A stretch of 12,939 nucleotides of DNA, from the NCBI GenBank assembly GCA_000388065.2, contig KB932210.1; one strand, written 5' to 3'. Below, piece after piece: positions 810 through 12,939 of this stretch. The first letter of the stretch is position 1, and each line of letters starts with the position of its first letter. The position numbers were made by a program, and so were the translations under genes. The notes under the pieces were generated by a model. It saw only the letters and a list, made by a program, of their open reading frames with translations, did not search any database and was not told the origin of the DNA. The DNA is from Fonticula alba ATCC 38817 (Eukaryota > Protista > Nucleariida).

Positions 810-1403
810 NNNNNNNNNNNNNNNNNNNNNNNNNNNNNNNNNNNNNNNNNNNNNNNNNNNNNNNNNNNNNNNNNNNNNNNNNNNNNNNNNNNNNNNNNNN
901 NNNNNNNNNNNNNNNNNNNNNNNNNNNNNNNNNNNNNNNNNNNNNNNNNNNNNNNNNNNNNNNNNNNNNNNNNNNNNNNNNNNNNNNNNNNNNNNNNNNN
1001 NNNNNNNNNNNNNNNNNNNNNNNNNNNNNNNNNNNNNNNNNNNNNNNNNNNNNNNNNNNNNNNNNNNNNNNNNNNNNNNNNNNNNNNNNNNNNNNNNNNN
1101 NNNNNNNNNNNNNNNNNNNNNNNNNNNNNNNNNNNNNNNNNNNNNNNNNNNNNNNNNNNNNNNNNNNNNNNNNNNNNNNNNNNNNNNNNNNNNNNNNNNN
1201 NNNNNNNNNNNNNNNNNNNNNNNNNNNNNNNNNNNNNNNNNNNNNNNNNNNNNNNNNNNNNNNNNNNNNNNNNNNNNNNNNNNNNNNNNNNNNNNNNNNN
1301 NNNNNNNNNNNNNNNNNNNNNNNNNNNNNNNNNNNNNNNNNNNNNNNNNNNNNNNNNNNNNNNNNNNNNNNNNNNNNNNNNNNNNNNNNNNNNNNNNNNN
1401 NNN
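810..1403. other. Assembly gap (594 N) hiding the start codon of gene 1
   Basis: Run of N, immediately preceded by a C22 homopolymer (786-807); the first bases after the gap are already in frame within a signal-peptide-like segment. Confidence 0.98.
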
Positions 1404-1487
1404 CGGCGCCACCGGCCACCGGGGCCGCTGCCACTGCTGAGTCCGCTGGTGCTGCTGGCGCTGCTGGTCGTGGGCCAGGCCATCGCC
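1404..1487 (+). other. Signal peptide of gene 1 (h-region LPLLSPLVLLALLVVG, likely cleavage after AIA)
   Basis: Basic n-region residues (RRHR), hydrophobic core and A-X-A motif before MDHAF; the true Met must lie in the gap. The first visible in-frame ATG (1488) is downstream of the signal. Confidence 0.75.
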
Positions 1488-2804
1488 ATGGACCATGCCT
1501 TCCTCCACGCCGTTCCCGCCTTCGACCCGGTGCTGGACGGGTGGCTGGACTTCACCACCCCCCATGGGCAACCGTCGACGGCATACACCCGGCCAACACA
1601 AGACCTCATCCGCACCTTCAGGCAGGTCAATTCCCTGGGCCCGAGCATGGAACATCGCCAGGGGCCCTTCTTCTCCGGTGTCTCGACGGACCTGGTCCGC
1701 AAGAACCCCAGCTTCGACGGGGGGTTCAAGCTCCGCCCTCTCGATGTCCTGCGGCCGGATCCTCCCCTCCTCGAGCAGCCGCCCTTCCTGATGGATACCA
1801 ATTCCAAAATGGGCTTCTTCACCGGGGAAGCAACCTTCTCCCTCCCCGGCGAGGGCGTCGCCATCGTGGCCGGCAGCTGCCTGTCCCTGGATGAGTGTGT
1901 CGTGTTCGGCCTCACGCATGTCGATCAACACTACAGCCCCTTCATGGCGCGCGTGGGGCAGCTCGCCTCCGAACCATTGGACACCCACGGATTGGGCTTG
2001 TCCGATCCGGTGCATGTCGTCGCCGGGCCCATGCAATCCTTCCACATCGCATCCCAAGGCATTGTCAGCCAGGTGGCGGCCCATTCGCCAGGCGAGTTGC
2101 TCGGCGTGCCGCAGAAGTACGGCGACGTCCGGGCGGTCCGGCTGTTGGCCACGCGCATGTACTCCCGCACCCGCGATTGCCCCTCTTCCTCGGACTTGGT
2201 GCTGCTGCTGGAGGACGGCCAAATCCTCGTCTGGCTGTGCGAGTGGTCCAGCGCCGGGGCCGAGCGGCCCCCGATGAAGGCCCCCCTGCCGGAGGGTGTG
2301 TCGGCCATCAGCGCCCGCCTGCTCAATCCCCCTGTCACGGCGTTCGCCCCGGATGACCAGCCCCTGCCCTATCTCCTGCTGTGGGACACCCTTTCGCGAG
2401 ACTGGCGGAAGGCCCTCTGGCGGGGGGTCCCCTCCGAAAGCGATCCCATCGCCTGGACCCGGGTCATCCTGCCTGTCGCGGTGACATTCCCCCTGGACTT
2501 GCATCTGATTCGGCTCAGGGCCGCCGCCGCCACATCGCCGGACGGGCTGTGGGCCTTGACCGACGGCGCGGTGGCCCTCTTTCCATCGAAGGACTTCCTC
2601 TGCGGATTGGACCGCTCCATCCGCTGCGCCGAGCACCTCGACGATGCCGACTCGCTTGTGAACGGGTGGACATGCGCCCCGGGCCACACCGAGTCGCCCT
2701 TCATCGCCTCGGAGCACCTGTGTGCCGGCTGTTCCGACGGTTTCTACCTCGACCGCCAGCCTGGTACGTGCATTTGTGTAGGTTTTTTTTTTTCATTTTT
2801 TATT

Positions 2805-2843
<39 letters not shown>

Positions 2844-5800
2844 CTTCTGTCCCCGAGACCACCCCCAGCCCCGAGACCACCCCCAGCCCCGAGGCCAATT
2901 CCGCAGGCCTTGTCACTCACCAAAAACGAACCTTTCCCCGGGTCCCCCCCCGTCCCTTCTTGGCCCCGCGCTCGCCTGCCGCCCTCTTTTACACAGACGA
3001 GCCGCCGATGTCTCAAGAATCGCACGTGTGCCGTGAGTGCCCCCAGAAAAACTGCCTGACATGCAACCCGGAGCACTGCCTCGTGTGTGACCGGGGCTTC
3101 GTCATGCAGTTCGGCCGCGAGGGCGAGGGAAACGCGTGCGTCGAAAAATGCCCCGACGGGTCGGGCCTCTACGGCGGAGCCTGCTACCCCTGGGGTACGC
3201 CGTTCCCGAAGCTGGAGGATTCCCCCCTGCGCGTGCTCCCCCGGGTTGACCAGCTGCCGTCGGAGCAGTTGACGGCCATCGTGCCCACGCGGCTGACCTT
3301 CGACCGGGACTCCGCCTCGCCGATCCTGTCGATGAGCCAGCCCGACCCCCCGCAGCATGTGCTCCTCTTCGACACCAAGCATGACACATACATCGTGCAC
3401 CGGAGCGAGCTCGGGCTCGAGGACGCGCCGTCCCTGATGCTCGTGCATTTGTTGAGCAAGGACCTCCCGGGGCCGGTGGTTGCCTCGGCCGAGGTGGGCC
3501 CCTTCTTCCATGATGGGGAGCTGGTCATGGGGCTGGTGCTGCTCACGCAGCTGGGCGAGCCCGTCCAGGTGTGGCTGTCCTGTGTCCCCCACGCGGAGGG
3601 GCCCTGCATGGCGACCTTCTCGGAGGTGAGCAGCCTGGAGGGCGCCTTCCTGGAGGTCCAGCGCCTGGATGACCGTCGGATTTTCCTGACAGCCGCCCAC
3701 GGCATGGCGGTCATCCTGGATGCCAGCCCGGCCGCGCGGCACTTCGGCCGGGTGCCCCTCCCGGCGCCGGCCTTCGGGGCGGTGGCCCTGCCCGGGCGCG
3801 AGGCCGGCCGGTCGTACCTGCCGGGCGACCTCGGGTCCTGGCTGGTGACCACGCGCCCGAATGCCCCGGCATCGGCCCAGCCCTGGGGGCTGGTGGCCAA
3901 TCAGGACCCCCGGCTCGGGGCCCTGGAGGGGGCCTTCCTGGCCTCGGTGCCGGCCATGTCGGAGGCGCCCTTCCTGCCGGTGCTCCTGCCTCGCGGGCAG
4001 GGCGCCCCGCCGGAGCTGGTCTTCTGCCCGCTGGCGCACGGCACATGGGAGGTGTACCATGTGCCGGGGGACATGCTGCCGGCCGGCCGGTCGACCGGCC
4101 TGCCGGGGGCGTGGCAGCGCCTGGGCCGCCTGCCGCGCGACCTGCCGGCCCCCTCCCCGGCCATGACGCACGTCCGCTACCAGGCCATCCCCCTGGACAC
4201 CGGGGACCCGATGTACCCGAGTGCCTTGGTGATCCTGTCGCGCACCTTCCTCGGGGTGTCCCTGCTCCGGTGCTCGGCGGCCAAGGAGCCCCATCACGCG
4301 GCCTGTCGGCTGACCGAGGCCACCTTCTTCAGCCTGGACCCGGTCGGCCTGGAGGAGAAGGCCCCCTTCTGGGGGTCGGTCGTGGCGCGCGAGCCGCCCG
4401 GCTCGTCGGCGTCCTCGGCCCCCGGCGGCCCTGTCCCCCGGTTGCCCGGGCTCCGGAGGGACTTGCTCTTTGTGTCGCCCGGCCGGGGCCTGGTCAGCGT
4501 GGACCTGGTGATCCGGTGCCCCGAGGGGACCTTCGGCCTGGACTGCCAGATGTGCCATCCCCTGTGCCGGGAGTGCTCCGGCCCGACGGCCGGCGACTGC
4601 CTGTCGTGCCGGGTCCACCTGCCGGCCGCGCCGAGCGTCTGCCTGGCCCAATGCCCCTGGGGCCTGGTCCTGGACCCGGCATCCGGCGCGTGCCGTTGCC
4701 ACGGCAGCTGCCTGCGCTGCGACGAAAGCCCCCCCGGCAGCCAGACGTATGCCTGCTCCCAGTGCTCGAGCGCCTTTGCCCCCGACCCCCGGGGCGTGGA
4801 CCCGAGCCGGTGCCTTGCGTGCGACCCCTCCTGCGCCGAGTGCGCGGTCCCCGCCGACCCGAGCGCCTGCACCCAGTGCCCCGGCACCGGGTGGCTGCTG
4901 GGCGGCGCGTGCGTGGCCGCCTGCCCGGTCGGCACCTGGGCCGATGACCTCACGCGCACGTGCCGCCCCTGCCCGGCCCGCTGCGAGGCGTGCTCCTCGG
5001 CCGGCGGCGCCTGCACGGCCTGCATCGCGCGGCATTATCTCGGCCAGGACGGCTTGTGCCGCGCGTGCGACAGCTCGTGCCATGTGTGTGCCGAGCGGCT
5101 GTCCTGCGAGGTGTGCCGGCCGGGGCTGGTGTTCCTGTCGGCCGAAAGCGCCACCCCCTCGCTGTGCGGCAGCACCTGCGCCCCGGGCGAGTATGTCGGG
5201 GCTGGCCGGTGCGCCGCGTGCGATGGGTCGTGTGAGCTGTGCGCCGGCGGGCCGGACCGGTGCCAGGTGTGTGCGGCGGGCTTCCGCTGGGGCGTGGTCC
5301 CGGGCCCCGGCGGCACTAGTACATGCGTCGCCTGTGAGCCTGGGTGCGCCTCTTGCACGAGCGCCGCCTGCCATGCCTGCCTGCCGGGCCTTGTCCTGGA
5401 CTCGAGCAACGCGTGCGTGGCCGCCTGCCCGGCCGGGTCGTTCAGCAACGGCGAGTCGTGCCAGCCGTGCGACGTGTCTTGTGTCGCCTGCGCCGGTGGC
5501 ATGGGCAACCAGTGCACGGGCTGTGCCGCCGGGCTGGAGCTTGTCGAAGTGACCCCCGGTATTGGCACCTGCGAGTCCGGCTGCCCGGAGGGCCAGTATC
5601 GTGCAGGTGTTGACTGCCTGCCCTGCGACGCGGCCTGCGCCACGTGCAACGGCCCCACGGACAAGGACTGCTGGCGGTGTGCCTCCGGCGTGCTGCAGGG
5701 GGGCGACTGCGTGCAGGACTGCGCGGCCAGGCATGTGGCCGTGGGCGACCGGTGCCTGCCGTGCCATGTCTCCTGCGCCGAGTGCGCCGGGGTCCGGTCG

Positions 5801-8152
5801 ACCGAGTGCCTGCCGGCCTGCCCTGGGGGACTGCTGGCCCTGCCGGCCGGGCAGTCGCCCACGCGCTGCGTGCCGGCCTGCCCAGTGGGGTACCACACCT
5901 CAATGGGCGGCTGCCGCCAGTGCACGGAGCACTGCGCCAGCTGCCCGGAGTCGAACGACACGTGCGCCCTGTGCGACCGGGGCTGGCTGCTGGCCAGCCC
6001 GGACTGCCTGGCCGAGTGCCCGGCCGGGTCGGTAGCCCAGGGCGGGCTGTGCGCCACCTGCCACGCGTCCTGCGCCACATGCTACGGCCCTGACCCGGAA
6101 AACTGCTTGACGTGTGCCCCATCCAAGCCGTTGGGCATGGATGGCGCCTGCTTTGACGCCTGTCCGCCGGGGACCTTCCAGTCGGGCGAGGCGTGCATGG
6201 CCTGCAACCCGGCGTGCGCGGCCTGCTCCGGGCCGGCGGCCACCGAGTGCACCTCCTGCCCGGGCAGCCGGCCGCTGATGGACGGGGCCTGTCTCGCGGC
6301 GTGCCCCGGCGGGTGGTTTGCTGATGGCGGGGTGTGCGTCGAGTGCGACGCGGGCTGCCGCACGTGCGACGGCCCGGCCACATGCACCTCGTGCCCGGCC
6401 GGGCTGATGCTCCGGCCGGACGGCTCGTGCGGGACCGCCTGCCCGGCCGGCTGGGCCGGCTGCACCGGGGCCGGCCGGTGTGAGGCGTGTCCGGAACACT
6501 GCACCGCATGCGCGATCAGCGACGCGGACTGCGCGCCAGTGTGCACCGTCTGCACGGGCGGCCACTTCCTGTGGGACGGGGCCTGCCACCTTTCCTGCCC
6601 CGCCGGGCAGTTCGCCGACCCGGGGAGCGCCGCCTGCCGGGCCTGCGACAGCGACTGCCGGACATGCGCCGGGGCGGCGGATCGGTGCACGAGCTGCACC
6701 ACCGGGGTGCTGCTGGTGTCGGAGGGGGCGTGCGTGTCCTCGTGCCCGGGCCCCTCGGCGCCGGCCCAGGGCATCTGCCTGGACTGTCCGGTGGGGTGCC
6801 TGCGGTGCGACGCGGGCGACGCGCCGGCCGAGTGCGAGGTCCAGCCCGGGGGGGCGTTGTCCTGCTCGGAGCTGCGCACCTGCGCCGAGTGTGCCGGCGG
6901 GCTGCTGCTGCTGGACGGGGCCTCGTGCGTGTCGGAGTGCCCGGCAGGGACCTTCGCCGACCATGAAGCCGCGCCGGCGTCGTGCGTCCCCTGTCACCCG
7001 AAGTGCAAGGTCTGCAGCGGCCCCGGTGCCGAGGACTGCGTGCGGTCGCCCAAGTCGGCATCCTCGCGCATCGGCCTCGCGGTCGGGCTGGGGGTCGGGC
7101 TGCTGGTGCTGCTGGTGCTGCTGATCCTGCTGGTGCTGTTCTGCGTCCGCCGGCGCGCCAAGGCCGGGCCCGGCGCCCCGAAGGAGCTGGACGCCGAGGA
7201 CGCCACCATGCTGAACACCATCGTGGAGCTGGCCCTGCCCGGGGCCATCCTGGTCGGTGTCGACACGGACTTCCGGCCGCTGGACGAGCAGCTGGGCGCC
7301 GGCACGCAGGCGTCGGTGTATGCGGCGCAGGCGGTCGGGGCCGGGATCGGGGCCCGGCTGGGCTGCCCGGACGTGGTGGCCGTGAAGAAGATGCGGACCG
7401 AGGCCATGGCCCCGGTGCACCACGCCTTGTTCCAGAACGAGGTGGCCCTGATGTGGCTGCTCCGGGAACACGGCAACATCGTCCGGCTGTACGGGTACAG
7501 CGAGCAGCCGCCGGCCATCGTCATGGAGCGCTACCAGACGGACCTGGCCACGCTGCTGCACTCGGAGGTCCCGCTGTCAGAGCTGCAGCTGGCGGACATC
7601 GGCCAGCAGTGGGCCACCGGGCTGGAGGCCATGCACGCGCACGGCATCGCCCACTGCGACCTGAAGCCGGGCAATGTGTTTGCCAGCCAACGGCCGGATG
7701 GCTCCTGGCGCGCGGCCCTCGGCGACCTGGGCACCTCGCGCAATCTGAGCGCCGACCGGTCGTCGGTCCTCGTCAACACCATGCCCGAGCTGAATGCCAT
7801 GACCGTGCGGTACGCCGCGCCGGAGGTGATCGCCGCCTTCCAGCGCGGGACTCCGCTGGACGCGGGACACTTCTTCCCGGCGGACATGTACGCCGCGGGC
7901 ATCATGCTGCTGGAGTGCCTCACCCGGTCGACCCCCTGGCCCGGGATGGACCTGTCGGCCATCGTGGCCGCCGTGCAGGCCGGCCAGCGCCCTGACACCA
8001 GCACCTTCCCCGGCACCGGGCCCTTTGCCAATGCCGGGGACCTGGTCGCGGCGACCTGGCAGGCGGACCCGGCCCGGCGGCCCGACGCCGCGGTCCTGCG
8101 CCAGCGGTGCGCCACCTTCTTCATTGCCGCCGGCGGCCTCGGCCGGTCGTAG
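1404..8152 (+). CDS. Gene 1: receptor-like TKL-family Ser/Thr protein kinase with furin-like cysteine-rich ectodomain; join(<1404..2763,2997..8152), 5' partial
   Basis: Frame 1404-2763 reads RRHRPPGPLPLLSPLVLLALLVVGQAIA (signal-like) to ...LCAGCSDGFYLDRQP. Splicing a phase-1 GT-AG intron joins it in frame to D-EPPMSQESHVCREC..., the frame of track ORF 2381..8152, which continues through Cys repeats, a TM helix and a complete kinase to TAG at 8150-8152. Exon total 1360+5156=6516 nt is divisible by 3. Confidence 0.9.
2805..2840 (+). repeat. Hexanucleotide microsatellite (CCGGCT)6, intronic
   Basis: Six perfect copies read directly, followed by CCG. Confidence 0.95.
2851..2893 (+). repeat. 18-bp tandem repeat CCCCGAGACCACCCCCAG x2 plus partial copy, intronic
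   Basis: Perfect copies at 2851-2868 and 2869-2886, partial CCCCGAG at 2887-2893. Confidence 0.92.
4517..7039 (+). other. Array of about 18 furin-like / CXXC cysteine-rich repeats (gene 1 stalk)
   Basis: Recurring pattern CPxG[F/Y/W]...CxxCxxxCxxCxG....CxxC.......C (e.g. CPPGTFQSGEACMACNPACAACSGPAATECTSC), counted by eye; matches furin-like Cys-rich / growth-factor-receptor Cys-rich repeats. Confidence 0.9.
7070..7147 (+). other. Transmembrane helix of gene 1
   Basis: IGLAVGLGVGLLVLLVLLILLVLFCV followed by the basic stop-transfer RRRAK (type I topology). Confidence 0.95.
7271..8120 (+). other. Protein kinase domain, TKL-like, non-RD
   Basis: LGAGTQASVY (Gly loop), VAVKK (beta3 Lys), NEVALM (alphaC Glu), NIVRLYGY, HCDLKPGN (catalytic loop), DLG, TVRYAAPE, DMYAAGIML, RRP (subdomain XI). 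DLKPxN and TxxYxAPE indicate Ser/Thr-type rather than Tyr kinase motifs. Confidence 0.95.
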
Positions 8153-8492
8153 GGGGCCGCCGGGCGCGGCCGCGGGGCGACCCTCCGGCCGGCCTCGCCC
8201 CCGCGCCCAATAGATTGTTTCTTGTCAAGCCCCCTCCCGGTGACCTCCTCCCCTTGCACGCTGCCGCCAGCACCGCTGGCCCCCTTCCGGCTGGCTTCCC
8301 TCCGCGCTGGGACTGGCGCGCCCCATCAGATGGGGCGGAACCTGTTGTGAGGCACGGCGGGCCCGTCGCCGAGGCCTGCCCGGGCAATCGTCCTGTGTGC
8401 GTGTGTGTGCTTGGGGGGTGCGGATGCATGCGTGCCCGCGGCCACATCTACGAAGGTGAGCGGGCGAGGCTTGGCGGCGGGGCGTCGAGGCA

Positions 8493-8496
<4 letters not shown>

Positions 8497-8526
<30 letters not shown>
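8497..8526 (+). repeat. (CA)15 microsatellite, intergenic
   Basis: Read directly. Confidence 0.95.
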
Positions 8527-8529
<3 letters not shown>

Positions 8530-8830
8530 ACGAGCGCGCGCGCCACGGCCGCCCGCGATTCCCCGGCGCGAGGGCAATCCTGAACGTTGGCACAAGGCGG
8601 CCCCCTGATAGTCACGGCAGGGCGCCGCGGGTCGATACGAGGGGCCGGCCCGGCGCATGACCCGGTCACATGAGCGGGTGCGCGCTCGGGGCACCACGGC
8701 CCCCCCCCCGCCGGCCTGCGCGCTGCTTTGTTGGGAATAATGCCTGACAAATTACATACGGGCTCAAACACCGAAGCCCAGGGGTGCCAATGGACGCCTG
8801 CCGCATCCATGTCGCGGGGCAGTGTGCGCC

Positions 8831-8846
8831 CGCGCGCGCGCGCGCG
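8831..8846 (+). repeat. (CG)8 tract, intergenic
   Basis: Read directly. Confidence 0.92.
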
Positions 8847-8958
8847 CACCCAGGCAGGGGGCCCACAAAGAGCGACCCCCAAGCGGCACCTCGGGCCCCG
8901 GGCAGCACAGGCAGCCAGATCCCCGAGCGGCGGCGTCCCCCACCCCCCACCCCTCCGC

Positions 8959-9013
8959 CGCACACACACGCACACACGCACACACGCACACACACACACA
9001 CACGCACATACAC
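8959..9013 (+). repeat. Compound (CA)n/(CG) alternating purine-pyrimidine tract just upstream of the gene 2 ATG
   Basis: 55 nt of uninterrupted Y/R alternation (CACACACACGCACACACG...CACATACAC) ending 39 nt before ATG 9053. Confidence 0.9.
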
Positions 9014-9052
9014 CTCCCCCCGCGTCCCCGCCCCTCGCTCCGGACAGCCAGC

Positions 9053-9194
9053 ATGGCCATGCGCGCGACGAGGCCCGGGCCGCCAGCTCGCCGGCGCTGG
9101 CCCGGTCCCGCCCACGCGTCCCCCGTGCCCTCGGCCCCCCCGGCGCCGCGGACACCGCTCGCCCCCGCTCTTGCCCTGCTGTCGCTGCTGTCGC

Positions 9195-9242
<48 letters not shown>

Positions 9243-9259
9243 CCGGATCGGTCTCCTCC
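9053..9259 (+). other. Long signal peptide of gene 2 with poly-Leu core
   Basis: 39-aa Arg/Pro-rich n-region, 24-residue hydrophobic core LALLSLLSLLSLLLLLLLLLLLLL, then PGSVSS as a plausible c-region; exact cleavage site uncertain. Confidence 0.75.
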
Positions 9260-12200
9260 TCCCTGCTCGAGGAGCAGCTCTACAAGCCTCTGCACCAGAT
9301 GACCTTCCCCGGCGCCCCGGGGCACCGGTACACACCGGCCGGCCGGCGGACCATGGCCCTGCGCTGGTCCCAGACCAACACACTTGAGGTCTTCCGGCAG
9401 GAGATCTTCCCGAGCACCATGCCGGAGTTCCGGTGGGGCCCCTTCCTGGAGGTGACGCCCAGCGCGTGGGTCCCGTCGGTGCGTGGCAAGACCGGCCTCG
9501 GCCCGCTGAGCAGGCTGCTGGTGTTCCCGGTCCCCGACACCGACATGCCCGTGGTCGTGGAGTACGACACCATCGACATGGCCCTCCTCCAATCGGCCCA
9601 CATCCACACCCTGCCCTGGACCGGGCACCAGATGGAGCTTCTCGCCGGCCGCGGGGTCGACCTCGACACCGTCCTCTTCCTGGTGTCCCAGAGGCTGGGC
9701 GACAACACACGCGAGGTCAGCCTCATGGTCCTGGCCGCCTCGGAGACCAGCCTGCCCCTGGAGCTGCTCCTCAAGGTGCCGGCCAATGATCCCGCGGGGT
9801 TGCACGCCGCTCCCGGCCCGGGAACATCGCTGCTCCTGCTCGCCGGGGATATCCTGTACCAGGTGTCCCTCACTGCCTCTTGGGATGTGGAGTACATGAT
9901 GGCTCCCCTGGGCATTGCCAACATCCTCGGCATGCATGTCTCGCGGCTGCTGCCGAGTGAGGGTGCTGCGTGTGCCTCCGGCGACCTGGTCCTCCTGCTG
10001 GCCGACCGCACCATCCGGGTGTTTCCCTGCTTCGCGGTGGACTCGCCGCTGCCGGGCTCCGTGGATGGGGCCCTGCCGCCGGGGGCCCTGACCCCCGGGC
10101 GCTTCCTCAATCCCACGCTGGACTCCATCACCCAGCCGGTCCCCTTCCTGTACTACTTGGACTCCGGCACCCCGCAGTCCGGGGGCCTGGTCCTGTGGCG
10201 CGCGCACATCACGCCATCTGCCTCGCAGAAGTTCACCTGGTCTCGCCTACAGACCCTCCACTCGCCCTTCGACCCGCAGGTGGACCTTGTGCGCATGCGG
10301 CTTGCCGCCTCCGGCGGCGGCGGCGGCGGCGCCGCCGACGACGACGCCCATGACCGCTGGCTTCCGCTGGTCGAAGATTTTGTCCTCTTCGACTCGGAGC
10401 AATTTGGCTGCGGCACCGACGACAGCATTATTTGCTCCGGCCCCGGCCTCGACCTGGGCCCGAATGTGCAAAGCGAATGTGCCCCGTCCCGGTCGATCAG
10501 CATGCTGGTCCCATCCGAGCGCCTATGCGCCGGCTGCGCTCCTGGCTACTCGATGAGCTGGTCGGATCGTGCGTCTTCCGATGGCCCCCTGGCCTGTGGT
10601 GTCCTTCACCTGTGTCTTTCTCTCTTGTCCCCTCTCTGCTTCGTCCTCGTCCCCTCGTGTCTCTCTCTCTCTCTCTCCCTTATCCTCTCCCTTATCCCCT
10701 CTCGGCCCCTCGCCCCCCCCCTCCCCCGCATCTTCTGCGCTGCATTCGCTGACCCATTCCGCTCTCTGTCCCCGTCGGCACACCCCCCCCCCCCTGCGTA
10801 TGGGCTTGTGCGGCTGCCGGCATGCCGGTCCTGTGGCTGGCGCGGCGTAGCCACCTTGCCCTGTCGACTCTGCCCTGGCCACTGCGGCGCTTGCGACGAG
10901 TCGGGCTGCCTCATCTGCCTCGCAAATTGGATGCTGGAGCCGAGCGGCCCGGCCGGGCAGGCCGTCTGCGTGTCCAGCTGCTCGGCCGGCTTCGAGGCCG
11001 TGGCCAACACCTGCCAGCCGATCAGCCACCCGGGGCCGGATGTGTCGCTGGCCTTCGACCGGCCGGTGGTGTCGTCGCCCGGCATCAACGCCGGGACATT
11101 CGTCCTGGACACGCATCTGGCCCTGGGCCCGATGGGCGAGCTGACCATCCCGGCCGCGGCCCTGGCCAACCCGGCCGGGCCCCGGGCTGGGAGTCTCTTT
11201 TTCATGGACAACGGCCATGTGTGGCTGGCGCCCAGCCGGGGCATCAGCTCCTCCGGCTTGCCGGGGCTGCTGCTGGAGCTGGTGCCCCCCCTGTCGGGCT
11301 TCGCCACGGGCCCGGTCCATGGCGCGGTGGAGCTGGGGCCCTATCTCGAGGATGGCCGGGCCGTCACGATGCTCGTCCTTTGCCATGGCGCCGGGCAGGG
11401 GATCTTCCTGTCGGTCTCCTGCCCGACCACCATCCTCGGGCCCGGGTGCTCGGTCGGGCTCCCGACGGCCATCCAGTCCGGGGGGGCCGCCTGCCAGGGC
11501 GTCCGGCGCCTTGACCCTGGCCATGCGATTCTCTCGCTCGATGCGTCGCACTCGGCGCTCCTCACCTGGCGCCACGCCCGGTGGCTGGATAGTCGCCTGG
11601 TGGCCGGCAGCCGCTTTGCCCTGCTGCCGGGCTGGCCGTCGGCCGGCGCCCAGCCCCCCGACCCGTGGCTCATGTACATCGACCAGGCGAACAGGCTCAC
11701 GGTCCTGCCGCTGGCCCTGCCGGAATCGGACCCCCGCATTCACATGCTGACCGGGGTGGCCCTGCCGACGGGTCTCCCCTCGCCGGCCGAGCTGCTTGCC
11801 CTGCCGGCCGGCGCCGGCCGGCTGGAGCCGGTGCTTTCCCTCCTCCATGAGGGCCTCTGGGTGGTGCACCTGCTGACCAAGGGCCTGGCGGGGGCCGGCC
11901 GTAATGTCGGCATGCTGACCACCAAGCAAACCCTCGGGGCCCTGCCCTCGCCACCGGACATGGGCTTCTCCTCGGTGACCTTCCAGGCCATCGACCTTTC
12001 CCCCGGGAGTGGCGAGCACCCGAGCGCCCTGGTGCTGCTGAGCGAGAAGTATGTGGGGCTGGCGGTGCTCCGGTGCCCCGGGTCCGGGCCCGGGCCGTGT
12101 GTCTTCCTGCCGGGCCGCTTTTACCAGCAGTCCCGGGCGCTGCCGCTGCTCGGCCGCCGGGGCGTCATCGCCCGGCCGGGGGGGCCGCTCGTCACCGATG

Positions 12201-12939
12201 CGCCCGGGCACCTGGCCACCCTGCTGGCCCTGGCCACCGGCTCGGACCCGGGCCTGGTGCTCACCTTCACGGCCGACTGCCCGAGCGGCACCTTCGGCCC
12301 CGAGTGCACCGCCTGCCATCCCACCTGCCAGCGCTGCGGCGGCCCGGGGCCCGACCACTGCCTGGACTGCGAGTTCTGGCTGCCCGGGGCGCCGGGCACA
12401 TGTCTGCCCGACTGCCCGGGCGGCGTCCCGCCCGGGCCCAGCGGCCAGTGCCCCTGCCCGGAGCACTGCACCACATGCGATGTCCAGTCGCCGGCTCCCC
12501 AGTGCTTGGCCTGTGCCCGGGGCTTTGCGCTGGACCCTGCCGGCGTGAGCCCGGGCCGGTGCGTCGCCTGCCACGCCAGCTGCGCCGAGTGCGCGCTCCC
12601 CGGCGACTCGGACGCCTGCACCAGCTGCCCGCCCGAGGCCGAGTGGCTCCTGGACGGGACGTGCGTGGCCGCCTGCCCGGCTGGCACCTGGCCCGATGCC
12701 CCCACGCGCGCGTGTCATCACTGCCCGGCCAGCTGCGCCACCTGCCAGTCGGCGAGTGCGTGCGCCACCTGCCCCGGCCAGCACTACCTCGGCCCGGACA
12801 GCCTGTGCCACGCGTGCAGCGGGTCGTGTGCCGCGTGCGACGGCAAGGCCTCCTGCGGGGCGTGCAAGCCCGGCCTGGTGTTCCTGTCGGCCGATCCGCA
12901 GCAGGCGTCCCTCTGCGGCAGCACCTGCGCCCCGGGCGA
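9053..12939 (+). CDS. Gene 2: paralog of gene 1, cysteine-rich surface receptor (probable receptor-like kinase); join(9053..10568,10851..>12939), 3' partial
   Basis: My translation of the frame starting at ATG 9053 (context CAGCATGG; nearest upstream in-frame stop TAA 8738-8740, no earlier ATG) has no stop to the window end. It gives MAMRATRPG...poly-Leu signal, then blocks matching gene 1: DLVLLLADRTIRVFPC vs DLVLLLEDGQILVWLC; LFDSEQFGCGTDDSIIC vs LFPSKDFLCGLDRSIRC; FQAIDL..PSALVLLS vs YQAIPL..PSALVILS; CPSGTFGPECTACHPTC vs CPEGTFGLDCQMCHPLC; PGLVFLSA.....SLCGSTCAPG in both. TM and kinase lie beyond the window and are inferred only. Confidence 0.9.
9176..9238 (+). repeat. Coding microsatellite (CTGCTGTCG)3(CTG)12
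   Basis: Read directly; encodes LLSLLSLLS followed by 12 Leu in the gene 2 frame. Confidence 0.95.
10569..10850 (+). other. Probable intron of gene 2 (282 nt, phase 1)
   Basis: Donor C|GTGCGT at 10569 sits at the same codon position as the gene 1 donor; pyrimidine-rich interior with (CT)8 and C12; branch-like GCTGAC at 10748-10753; the first AG after the donor is at 10849-10850 and is phase-compatible. The acceptor lacks an adjacent pyrimidine tract, so the 3' boundary is less certain. Confidence 0.72.
10661..10676 (+). repeat. (CT)8 microsatellite in the gene 2 intron
   Basis: Read directly. Confidence 0.9.
12278..12939 (+). other. Start of the furin-like Cys-rich repeat array of gene 2 (first ~5 units, truncated by window end)
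   Basis: CPSGTFGPECTACHPTCQRCGGPGPDHCLDC...; unit-by-unit colinear with gene 1 repeats 1-5. Confidence 0.9.

What the first reader, a model, noticed from the sequence alone, without database searches (positions are those of the whole stretch)
1404..12939. Tandem pair of giant receptor kinases: a candidate diversified sensing/recognition receptor cluster in a protist
Seen: two co-oriented genes 900 nt apart with the same ectodomain order (signal, module A, Cys linker, module B, furin-like array); gene 1 ends in TM plus kinase. Known: expanded Cys-rich transmembrane kinase families occur in amoeboid protists (Entamoeba TMKs with CXXC ectodomains), and fungi generally lack single-pass receptor kinases. 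Inferred: this is part of a tandemly expanded receptor family reading prey, kin or pathogen ligands. If the host is Fonticula alba (unverified guess), it would be a receptor system independent of animal RTKs in an aggregative fungal relative.
Basis: partly seen in the sequence, partly recalled or inferred. Interest (0 to 1): 0.8.

Follow-up and report, generated by a model that had tools for sequence, protein, structure and literature searches.

The report
Fonticula double-propeller receptor kinase array
The two genes are real neighbours in a very large, Fonticula-only family of surface receptors that carry two fast-changing propeller-shaped heads on a cysteine-rich stalk and an inner kinase, showing that a close amoeboid relative of fungi built its own receptor-kinase system.

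Summary
The window is Fonticula alba scaffold KB932210.1.

- **Gene 1** (1404-8152) is GenBank "TKL protein kinase" (2143 aa). It has a signal peptide cut by an N gap, module A, a Cys linker, module B, about 17 furin-like repeats, a TM segment and an intact kinase.
- **Gene 2** starts 900 nt downstream (ATG 9053). It repeats the same order until the contig ends in a scaffold gap, so its TM and kinase cannot be seen.

New here:
- Modules A and B each fold as roughly seven-bladed beta-propellers (pLDDT 85-89). Only Fonticula paralogs are close structural relatives.
- A profile of the head finds 71 protein clusters. Every one I checked is F. alba.
- At least 20 co-oriented copies fill about 350 kb of this gap-ridden scaffold.
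- The propellers are about 30% identical between paralogs, the stalk 52% and the kinase 64%.
- 38 of 40 kinases keep all catalytic residues, and 27 of 40 are non-RD.

Best reading: these are diversified ligand-sensing receptor Ser/Thr kinases. The ligand class is only inferred. I found no paper describing the family. The scan already followed up the same family 31 kb downstream (s1-065398). No RNA evidence was obtained.

The parts
810..1403 (.). Assembly gap (594 N) that removes gene 1's start codon and the first part of its signal peptide
1428..1487 (+). Gene 1 signal-peptide hydrophobic core (LPLLSPLVLLALLVVGQAIA), lying upstream of the annotated start Met at 1488
   Evidence: aligns with the signal peptides of paralogs P0013/P0015
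1488..2588 (+). Gene 1 module A (P0001 aa 1-367): roughly seven-bladed beta-propeller
   Evidence: AF2 pLDDT 88.6, pTM 0.89; Foldseek and VIA Z about 17 to WD40-type propellers
2589..3175 (+). Gene 1 Cys-rich linker (aa 368-485, 14 Cys), interrupted by the phase-1 intron at 2764-2996
3176..4516 (+). Gene 1 module B (aa 486-932): second, unrelated, roughly seven-bladed beta-propeller
   Evidence: AF2 pLDDT 85.4, pTM 0.88; VIA Z about 19; hhalign of A against B gives probability 0.6%
4517..7066 (+). Gene 1 furin-like repeat stalk (aa 933-1782; 140 Cys in 855 aa, about 17 repeats). It includes a mid-stalk core (about 5141-6040) that is 78-88% identical to distant paralogs
7067..7147 (+). Gene 1 transmembrane helix, followed by the basic stop-transfer sequence CVRRR
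7148..8152 (+). Gene 1 juxtamembrane segment and protein kinase domain, ending at the stop codon. HCDLKPGN lies at 7652-7675 and the DLG motif at 7724-7732
   Evidence: Pfam Pkinase E 9e-32; B-Raf is the best solved relative at 1e-16; motif table
8153..9052 (.). 900-nt intergenic spacer with (CA)n tracts at about 8493-8527 and 8958-9010
9053..9247 (+). Gene 2 start and signal peptide, with a (CTG)n poly-Leu run
9248..10396 (+). Gene 2 module A (propeller by homology)
10397..11035 (+). Gene 2 Cys-rich linker, with an inferred phase-1 intron at 10599-10850 (GTGTCC..TAG) at the same position as gene 1's intron
   Evidence: placed by homology only, no RNA support
11036..12277 (+). Gene 2 module B (propeller by homology)
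12278..12939 (+). Gene 2 first 220 aa of the furin-like stalk (37 Cys). The frame is open to the last base and then runs into a scaffold gap

Best explanation
Gene 1 and gene 2 are neighbouring members of a Fonticula alba-specific, tandemly amplified family of type-I single-pass receptor Ser/Thr kinases. From the outside in, each protein has a signal peptide, a seven-bladed beta-propeller (A), a spacer of about 120 aa with 14 cysteines, a second unrelated seven-bladed propeller (B), a rod of about 850 aa made of roughly 17 furin-like cysteine repeats, one TM helix, and a cytosolic kinase with a Ser/Thr-type catalytic loop. The architecture is shown. What follows is inferred. The two propellers form the ligand-binding head and have diversified so far that each paralog has its own specificity. 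The conserved stalk holds the head away from the membrane. Ligand binding brings receptors together, possibly non-RD members with RD members, so that the conserved kinases phosphorylate each other and pass a signal inward. The most likely ligands are surface molecules of bacteria that this bacterivorous amoeba eats or must resist. Gene 2 most likely continues into the same stalk core, TM and kinase inside the assembly gap.
For: - Identity and architecture.
- The kinase is intact. The VAVKK Lys, the NEV Glu, HCD, KPGN, DLG and APE are all present, and 38 of 40 family kinases keep all of these residues.
- Both heads fold confidently as propellers. Only F. alba paralogs are close structural relatives in AFDB clusters.
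- There is a divergence gradient: A 30%, linker 47%, B 31%, stalk 52%, TM plus kinase 64%. Gene 2's propellers are at most 33% identical to any paralog.
- The family is large and found only in Fonticula. The head profile finds 71 clusters at E<1e-10 and the kinase search finds 51 hits; every protein checked for source is F. alba.
- The copies are tandem and co-oriented, from about record position 264 kb to at least 612 kb. A clade of 8 RD kinases all come from this one scaffold.
- 27 of 40 kinases are non-RD, a feature linked to innate-immune receptor kinases across kingdoms (PMC8463890).
- Gene 2 ends on the stalk motif PGLVFL..LCGxTCxPG. Of 14 family models with that motif, 10 go on to a kinase and none of the kinase-less members has it.
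Against: - I obtained no RNA evidence. No RNA run was listed as holding the stretch, and the runs I laid are DNA contigs. Expression and the gene 2 intron are therefore unverified.
- No ligand, localisation or kinase activity is known.
- Gene 2's TM and kinase are absent from the assembly. Kinase-less family members do exist (P0019, P0030, P0061, P0076), so gene 2 could be one of them.
- Fast divergence of the heads could reflect relaxed constraint rather than selection for new specificities; no dN/dS or population test was possible.
- Propellers also serve as scaffolds, not only as ligand binders.
- The structure models rest on alignments made of paralogs only.
Confidence: 0.7

Rival explanations
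1. The family is an allorecognition (kin-discrimination) system for aggregative fruiting. The propeller heads would bind heads on neighbouring Fonticula cells, much as the polymorphic TgrB1/TgrC1 pair does in Dictyostelium.
For: F. alba aggregates to form fruiting bodies (PMC6733946, Supplementary Note 1). The family is large, species-specific, tandem and has hypervariable heads. Its absence outside Fonticula fits a lineage-specific social trait.
Against: Known allorecognition loci tend to have few genes with many alleles, not about 70 fixed paralogs (from my own knowledge). An independent soil-metagenome contig differs from gene 2 by only 4 bases in 1.5 kb, 2 of them in the intron (tables 3 and 8), so there is no sign of hyperpolymorphism. 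That is only one other sample, however.
Confidence: 0.15
2. The proteins are mainly adhesion or phagocytosis receptors, or a variable cysteine-rich surface coat like Entamoeba TMKs and Giardia VSPs. In this reading the kinase only couples engulfment to the cytoskeleton, and there is no paralog-specific ligand code.
For: There is a Pfam VSP match above the cutoff in the stalk. Entamoeba has a multi-family set of Cys-rich transmembrane kinases, one of which (PATMK) acts in phagocytosis (PMC2880585, PMC2211552). Fonticula feeds on bacteria.
Against: The variable part here is the two folded propellers, not the Cys-rich repeats, which are the conserved part. This pattern points to specific recognition by the heads rather than to coat variation.
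Confidence: 0.2
3. Gene 2 is a kinase-less receptor-like protein (a decoy or co-receptor) or a truncated pseudogene, so the pair is not two receptor kinases.
For: The GenBank model for gene 2 is 1052 aa with no kinase. Kinase-less members that end in a TM helix plus a short tail do exist. The 3' end of gene 2 is not assembled.
Against: The GenBank model reaches its stop at 12548 only by leaving frame 2. Frame 2 stays open to 12937 and remains homologous to paralog stalks (53% to gene 1, E 1e-61). The stalk motif at its end occurs in kinase-bearing members and not in kinase-less ones. The contig breaks exactly where the near-identical stalk core begins, as expected from collapse of a repeat during assembly.
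Confidence: 0.25
4. The pair or the family is an assembly or annotation artefact, caused by collapsed or chimeric copies.
For: The scaffold is riddled with gaps of up to 29 kb. Several gene models are fused or are spliced across gaps (P0016, P0032, P0037, P0044, P0071).
Against: A 3457-base contig from a public run matches 9249-12672 with no differences, and contigs from independent samples match with 0-4 differences (table 8). Both genes have long open frames with family-wide homology. Paralogs differ by 50-70% in the heads, so they are distinct loci.
Confidence: 0.03

Closest known systems
Entamoeba histolytica transmembrane kinases (EhTMKs; PMC2880585, PMC2211552)
   Same: These too form a large multi-copy family in an amoeboid protist. 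Both have a type-I topology, a cysteine-rich (CXXC, Giardia-VSP-like) ectodomain, a single TM helix and a cytosolic kinase. Some copies are truncated or lack the kinase. At least one member acts in phagocytosis.
   Different: The Fonticula proteins carry two folded beta-propeller heads and a Cys linker distal to the repeats. I know of no such heads in EhTMKs, but I did not test this here. The organisms are unrelated (Holomycota versus Amoebozoa). No orthology was shown, and no non-Fonticula protein matched the head profile.
Plant receptor-like kinases and receptor-like proteins (RLK/Pelle family; non-RD PRRs such as EFR, FLS2, XA21 with RD co-receptors)
   Same: Both are lineage-specific tandem expansions of single-pass Ser/Thr receptor kinases. 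Both have variable ectodomains and a conserved kinase. Both mix non-RD and RD members (27 versus 13 of 40 here). Both have kinase-less relatives.
   Different: The ectodomains here are propellers plus furin-like repeats, not LRR, LysM or lectin domains. Membership of the kinase in the RLK/Pelle-IRAK clade was not tested. The DFG motif is DLG.
EGFR / insulin-receptor ectodomain layout (L1 - furin-like CR - L2 - CR2 - TM - kinase)
   Same: The order is the same: globular head, Cys-rich spacer, second globular head, Cys-rich region, TM, kinase. There is also a weak GF_recep_IV match (E 8e-5, below the Pfam cutoff).
   Different: The heads are seven-bladed propellers, not beta-helix L domains. The kinase has a Ser/Thr-type loop, not a tyrosine-kinase loop. 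The stalk is about 17 repeats long.
MET/RON and plexins (Sema propeller + PSI cysteine knot); ROS1/Sevenless (YWTD propellers); M. tuberculosis PknD (NHL propeller sensor)
   Same: These are receptor kinases or receptors that use an extracellular beta-propeller, followed by a small Cys-rich module, as the ligand-binding head.
   Different: There is no Sema, YWTD or NHL Pfam match, and none of these domains is in the top 50 structural matches. Only the LGI1 EPTP propeller, an extracellular one, ranks among otherwise generic WD40-type hits. Two different propellers in series on a long furin-like rod is not an architecture I could find described.

Membership tests
Eukaryotic protein kinase superfamily (Pfam PF00069) | Significant match to the kinase profile above the gathering score | tested here: met
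   Pkinase E 8.9e-32, 110.9 bits against a cutoff of 31.7
Eukaryotic protein kinase superfamily (Pfam PF00069) | Catalytic residues present: G-loop, beta3 Lys, alphaC Glu, HxD Asp, catalytic-loop Asn, DFG Asp, APE | tested here: met
   Gene 1 has LGAGTQASV, VVAVKKM, FQNEVAL, HCDLKPGN, LGDLGTS (DLG in place of DFG) and YAAPEV
TKL group of kinases (the GenBank label) | Groups with TKL kinases in a kinase-domain phylogeny or has its best similarity to TKL members | tested here: inconclusive
   The best solved relatives are B-Raf and RAF1 at E 1e-16 to 1e-13. However, Pkinase scores higher than PK_Tyr_Ser-Thr, the Atlas neighbours are generic Ser/Thr kinases, and no reference phylogeny could be run.
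Animal receptor tyrosine kinases | Tyrosine-kinase catalytic loop (HRDLAARN or HRDLRAAN) | tested here: not met
   The loop is HCDLKPGN in gene 1 and HxDLKPxN in 38 of 40 paralogs
EGFR/insulin-receptor ectodomain family | Receptor L domains (right-handed beta-helix) flanking a furin-like region | tested here: not met
   There is no Recep_L_domain match. Both heads are predicted to be seven-bladed propellers.
Furin-like / VSP-type cysteine-rich repeats | Repeated CxxC-containing units of about 45-50 aa that match the Pfam models | tested here: met
   VSP E 6.7e-14, 52 bits against a cutoff of 31.4; GF_recep_IV is below its cutoff. There are 140 Cys in 855 aa in a regular CPxG..C..C pattern.
Entamoeba TMK family | Sequence relationship (orthology or a shared family) beyond the common architecture | not tested
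   No Entamoeba sequence was retrieved, and none appeared in the head-profile search.
Sema-domain receptors (MET, plexin) | Sema-type propeller with a PSI domain | tested here: not met
   There is no Sema or PSI Pfam match, and no Sema-domain chain is in the top 50 Foldseek or VIA matches for either head.
WD40-repeat proteins | WD40 sequence repeats | tested here: not met
   There is fold similarity only (TM about 0.5, Z 17-19, 6-12% identity) and no WD40 Pfam match.
Type-I single-pass receptor | N-terminal signal peptide, one TM helix, positive-inside tail, catalytic domain in the cytosol | tested here: met
   Gene 1 has a partial signal peptide at 1428-1487 and one TM helix at aa 1784-1809 followed by CVRRR. 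Gene 2 has a signal peptide only; its TM is not assembled.

The most novel reading that the evidence does not exclude
Fonticula has independently evolved a plant-like surface immune or prey-recognition repertoire. In it, non-RD double-propeller receptor kinases, RD paralogs and kinase-less receptor-like proteins from the same arrays work as sensor, co-receptor and decoy heteromers, and gene conversion in the stalk core shuffles heads onto signalling modules. This would be a third independent invention of an RLK/RLP-type innate recognition system, in the sister lineage of fungi.
Probability: 0.15. Interest if true: 0.85.

Novelty: new variant of a known kind. Interest (0 to 1): 0.6.

Why it matters
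Fungi are reported to have no receptor-kinase architectures (PMC6733946), and Fonticula is their closest amoeboid, aggregative relative. This family accounts for about 70 or more gene models out of roughly 6,300, which is over 1% of the genes and perhaps a fifth of the 323 Ser/Thr kinases counted for Fonticula. Cys-rich receptor kinases have therefore been invented and expanded in at least one holomycotan lineage, apart from animal RTKs, plant RLKs and Entamoeba TMKs. The family offers a concrete candidate set for how a bacterivorous, socially aggregating amoeba recognises prey, pathogens or partners. It also adds a head design (two different propellers in series) that I could not find described. 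In practical terms, the current assembly and annotation of these loci are unreliable: there are gaps at the conserved stalk core, fused and truncated models, and missing signal peptides.

Tried and rejected
- **RNA support.** Two run searches listed no RNA run that holds the stretch. The four runs I laid are DNA contigs that include the intron. Expression and splicing therefore stay untested.
- **A contig joint.** One contig joins 8485 to 9249. The skipped piece ends in CG..AT and is flanked by simple repeats, so I rejected it as an intron.
- **Extending gene 2 past the window end.** Two exact-pattern scans of JGI metagenome contigs found nothing.
- **A and B as copies of one domain.** hhalign gives probability 0.6%, so this is rejected at the sequence level, although both are propellers.
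- **EGFR-type L domains and Sema domains.** Both were rejected by fold and by Pfam.
- **Kinase subgroup.** The ESM Atlas returned only generic Ser/Thr kinases. I could not build a proper kinome phylogeny because I had no reference sequences.
- **Narrow HMMs.** HMMs built from 6 sequences missed the more divergent heads that the whole-head profile found. The counts by module are therefore lower bounds.
- **Literature.** Six searches found no description of the family. The library lacks most subscription journals.

Full report
**What is in the window.**
The sequence is 66-76% G+C and has one internal run of 594 N at 810-1403. On the + strand, frame 3 is open from the gap to 2763. A 233-nt intron with consensus ends (GTACGT..CAG, phase 1) spans 2764-2996. 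Frame 2 is then open to a stop at 8150-8152. The spliced product equals GenBank protein P0001, "TKL protein kinase [Fonticula alba]", 2143 aa, at 100% identity. The annotated start Met (1488) lies just after a typical signal-peptide core (LPLLSPLVLLALLVVGQAIA, 1428-1487) that aligns with the signal peptides of paralogs. The true start codon is therefore lost in the N gap, and the database protein lacks its signal peptide.

The second gene starts at ATG 9053, exactly 900 nt after the first gene's stop. It has a long poly-Leu signal peptide, and its frame stays open to the last base of the window.

**The window's ends are assembly gaps.**
The window corresponds to positions 311,848-324,786 of scaffold KB932210.1 (619 kb). 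It is bounded by N runs of 3,895 on the left and at least 5,213 on the right. The next assembled sequence that I could fetch begins at 355,839, so the right-hand gap may be as long as 31 kb.

GenBank's model for gene 2 (1052 aa, ending at 12548) reaches a stop only by leaving frame 2. Frame 2 stays open and remains homologous to paralog stalks up to 12937 (53% identity to gene 1, E 1e-61). Gene 2 is therefore truncated by the assembly, and its TM and kinase cannot be checked.

Gene 2's intron (10599-10850, GTGTCC..TAG, phase 1) is inferred from homology. It sits at the same place and in the same phase as gene 1's intron.

**Architecture of gene 1.**
- Pfam finds a protein kinase domain (E 9e-32), Giardia-VSP-type cysteine repeats above the cutoff, and nothing at all in the first roughly 930 residues.
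- The stalk (aa 933-1782) holds 140 Cys in a regular CPxG..C..C..C pattern, which makes about 17 furin-like units.
- A single TM helix is followed by CVRRR and then the kinase.
- The kinase keeps every catalytic residue. Its loop is HCDLKPGN (Ser/Thr type, non-RD), and it has DLG in place of DFG.
- B-Raf and RAF1 are the best solved relatives (E 1e-16). Pkinase nevertheless outscores PK_Tyr_Ser-Thr, and the Atlas neighbours are generic. I therefore regard the "TKL" label as unproven.

**The two unassigned modules are beta-propellers.**
I predicted both structures with AlphaFold2, using alignments of 31 and 38 paralogous segments.
- Module A (aa 1-367) gave pLDDT 88.6 and pTM 0.89, with 27 strands.
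- Module B (aa 486-932) gave pLDDT 85.4 and pTM 0.88.

Foldseek against the PDB returns only seven-bladed WD40-type propellers, with TM about 0.5 and 7-13% identity. VIA-align gives a flat plateau at Z about 17 for A and Z about 19 for B; LGI1's extracellular EPTP propeller is among the top matches for B. In AlphaFold DB fold clusters, only two other Fonticula proteins are close (TM 0.70-0.86), and everything else is generic. A profile-profile comparison of A against B finds no homology (probability 0.6%). The head is therefore two different, lineage-specific propellers separated by a linker of about 120 aa with 14 Cys. It follows an EGFR-like order of parts but does not use EGFR-type L domains.

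**Family size and range.**
- A profile of A + linker + B was searched against 1.84 billion cluster representatives. It found 71 proteins at E<1e-10 and one weak hit (E 1.5e-4) that matches only the Cys linker.
- A search with gene 1's TM plus kinase found 51 proteins at E<1e-20, 53-73% identical in the kinase. All are named Fonticula alba.
- I looked up 20 of the lowest-scoring or unnamed head hits. Nineteen are F. alba; the exception is the weak hit mentioned above.
- F. alba has roughly 6,300 gene models, judged from the locus tags seen, so the family is more than 1% of its genes.
- The family is not detected elsewhere in a collection of 15 billion proteins. I could not verify how well other nucleariids are represented in that collection.

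**Genomic arrangement.**
I fetched six stretches of the same scaffold. Family genes run from about 264 kb to at least 612 kb, and each lies on the same strand as its neighbours. They are interrupted by gaps of up to 29 kb. At least 20 gene models on this scaffold belong to the family. Locus tags indicate further arrays on other scaffolds, for example H696_03227-03238 and H696_05292-05301. Several models are clearly fused, with two A-B units in P0016, P0032, P0037 and P0044, or are spliced across gaps (P0071). Counts are therefore approximate and probably too low.

**Pattern of divergence.**

| Region | Mean pairwise identity, 10 full-length paralogs |
|---|---|
| Module A | 30% |
| Cys linker | 47% |
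| Module B | 31% |
| Stalk | 52% |
| TM + kinase | 64% |

- Gene 1 against gene 2 gives 26% for A, 32% for B and 53% for the stalk. Gene 2's propellers are at most 33% identical to any paralog.
- The two neighbours are therefore old, strongly diverged copies, not a recent duplicate pair.
- In a kinase tree, gene 1 falls in a clade whose members are spread over many scaffolds, while eight RD kinases from this scaffold form one clade of their own.
- Of 40 kinase domains, 38 keep all catalytic residues. 27 are non-RD (HCD 22, HGD 4, HCH 1) and 13 are RD.
- The paralog 31 kb downstream (P0002: HGDLSPAN, LGHLG) and P0063 look like pseudokinases.
- Some members end in a TM helix plus a short tail with no kinase.

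**Most likely mechanism.**
What is shown: a type-I topology, folded variable heads, a conserved rod, and conserved kinases that look active. What is inferred: the propellers bind ligands, each paralog has its own specificity, and binding drives receptor association and trans-phosphorylation.

[quoted passage not shown] Entamoeba's Cys-rich TMK families include a phagocytosis receptor (PMC2211552, PMC2880585). On that basis I favour recognition of bacterial (prey or pathogen) surface molecules. Kin recognition during aggregation and plain adhesion or phagocytosis remain live rivals. The single independent environmental contig over gene 2 differs at only 4 of 1,550 bases. This gives no hint of the hyperpolymorphism expected for allorecognition, but it is one sample.

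**Is gene 2 a kinase?**
This is not shown. Three points are in favour.
- The contig ends exactly where the family's most conserved stalk core begins. That core, gene 1 aa about 1141-1440, is 78-88% identical even to distant paralogs.
- Read depth rises there (table 2), as expected where an assembler collapses repeats.
- The stalk motif at gene 2's end is found in 14 family models. Ten of them continue to a kinase, three are truncated and one is a chimeric model. The kinase-less members lack the motif.

I put the chance that gene 2 has a TM and kinase at about 0.75.

**Known or new.**
The genes are in GenBank with automatic names. I found no paper describing the family. Kiss et al. 2019 counted 323 Ser/Thr kinases in Fonticula and stated that fungi show no receptor-kinase architectures.

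The same scan has already followed up this family 31 kb downstream (s1-065398) and reached the same general reading. Other first-reader notes on this window mention the non-RD/DLG motifs, the divergence gradient and the two unassigned modules.

This report adds:
- the propeller fold of both heads, and their lack of mutual sequence homology;
- the family count and the checks on which species the hits come from;
- the extent of the array and how it relates to the assembly gaps;
- the corrected gene models;
- the RD/non-RD census.

**Limits.**
There is no RNA, protein or ligand evidence. The structure models rest on paralog-only alignments. The kinase group is unresolved. Copy number is uncertain because of the gaps. 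The literature search covers open-access papers and bioRxiv only.

Noticed in passing
window 5141-6040 (gene 1 aa ~1141-1440); L001:20823-21799: This mid-stalk core is 78-88% identical in protein to otherwise distant paralogs (P0054, P0014). It is 87.8% identical in DNA over 983 nt. Third-codon-position identity is 85% here, against 73-76% in the kinase comparisons. This suggests gene conversion or mosaic exchange among array members.
   Followed up: partly
window 12939 (end); L003 after 14694; record gaps 267950-297160 and 324787-355838(?): Contigs of the assembly break where the conserved stalk core begins (gene 2 here, and the partial P0014). The breaks are followed by gaps of 5-31 kb. The gaps probably hide more copies.
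   Followed up: partly
window 1428-1488: The GenBank protein for gene 1 starts at an internal Met. The signal-peptide core lies just upstream, and the real start codon is lost in the 594-N gap.
   Followed up: yes
window 12042-12548: The GenBank model of gene 2 (1052 aa) ends at a frame-3 stop at 12546-12548. The homologous frame 2 continues to the end of the window, so the annotated 3' end is probably an artefact.
   Followed up: yes
L001:10001-16363 (P0002, 31 kb downstream): This paralog has HGDLSPAN and LGHLG, so it has lost the catalytic-loop Lys and the DFG Asp. It is a probable receptor pseudokinase. P0063 (HCHFGPDK) is another.
   Followed up: partly
P0019, P0030, P0061, P0076/P0103 (other scaffolds): These family members end in a TM helix plus a tail of 20-50 aa, with no kinase and a short stalk. 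They form a class comparable to plant receptor-like proteins.
   Followed up: partly
P0016, P0032, P0037, P0044; P0071 (L006:10001-43543): These gene models contain two A-B units or are spliced across a 29-kb gap. They are fused or chimeric annotations.
   Followed up: partly
window 8485/9249: One public-run contig joins 8485 directly to 9249, skipping 763 nt. The skipped piece ends in CG..AT and is flanked by (CA)n and (CTG)n repeats. It is probably an assembler artefact, not an intron.
   Followed up: partly
window 7140-7939: Summed contig depth over the kinase is 50-170 times that of the unique head region in the same run. This reflects the many near-identical kinase paralogs.
   Followed up: no
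window 9053-12939 (runs X3-X6, X8, X4, X10): Near-identical Fonticula sequence is present in 2025 DNA runs labelled with a different organism, and in soil and sediment metagenomes. Either the species is widespread or these samples are contaminated or mixed.
   Followed up: no
window 2780-2900; 8493-8527; 8958-9010; 9176-9241; 170-230 and 780-809: Simple repeats are present: a T-run and (GGCTCC)n inside gene 1's intron, (CA)n tracts in the spacer, (CTG)n encoding the poly-Leu of gene 2's signal peptide, and long C-runs upstream of gene 1.
   Followed up: no
window 2744-5896 (-), 10523-12811 (-): There are very long antisense open frames (1050 and 762 aa). These are expected from about 92% GC3 on the coding strand and are not evidence of genes.
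   Followed up: no
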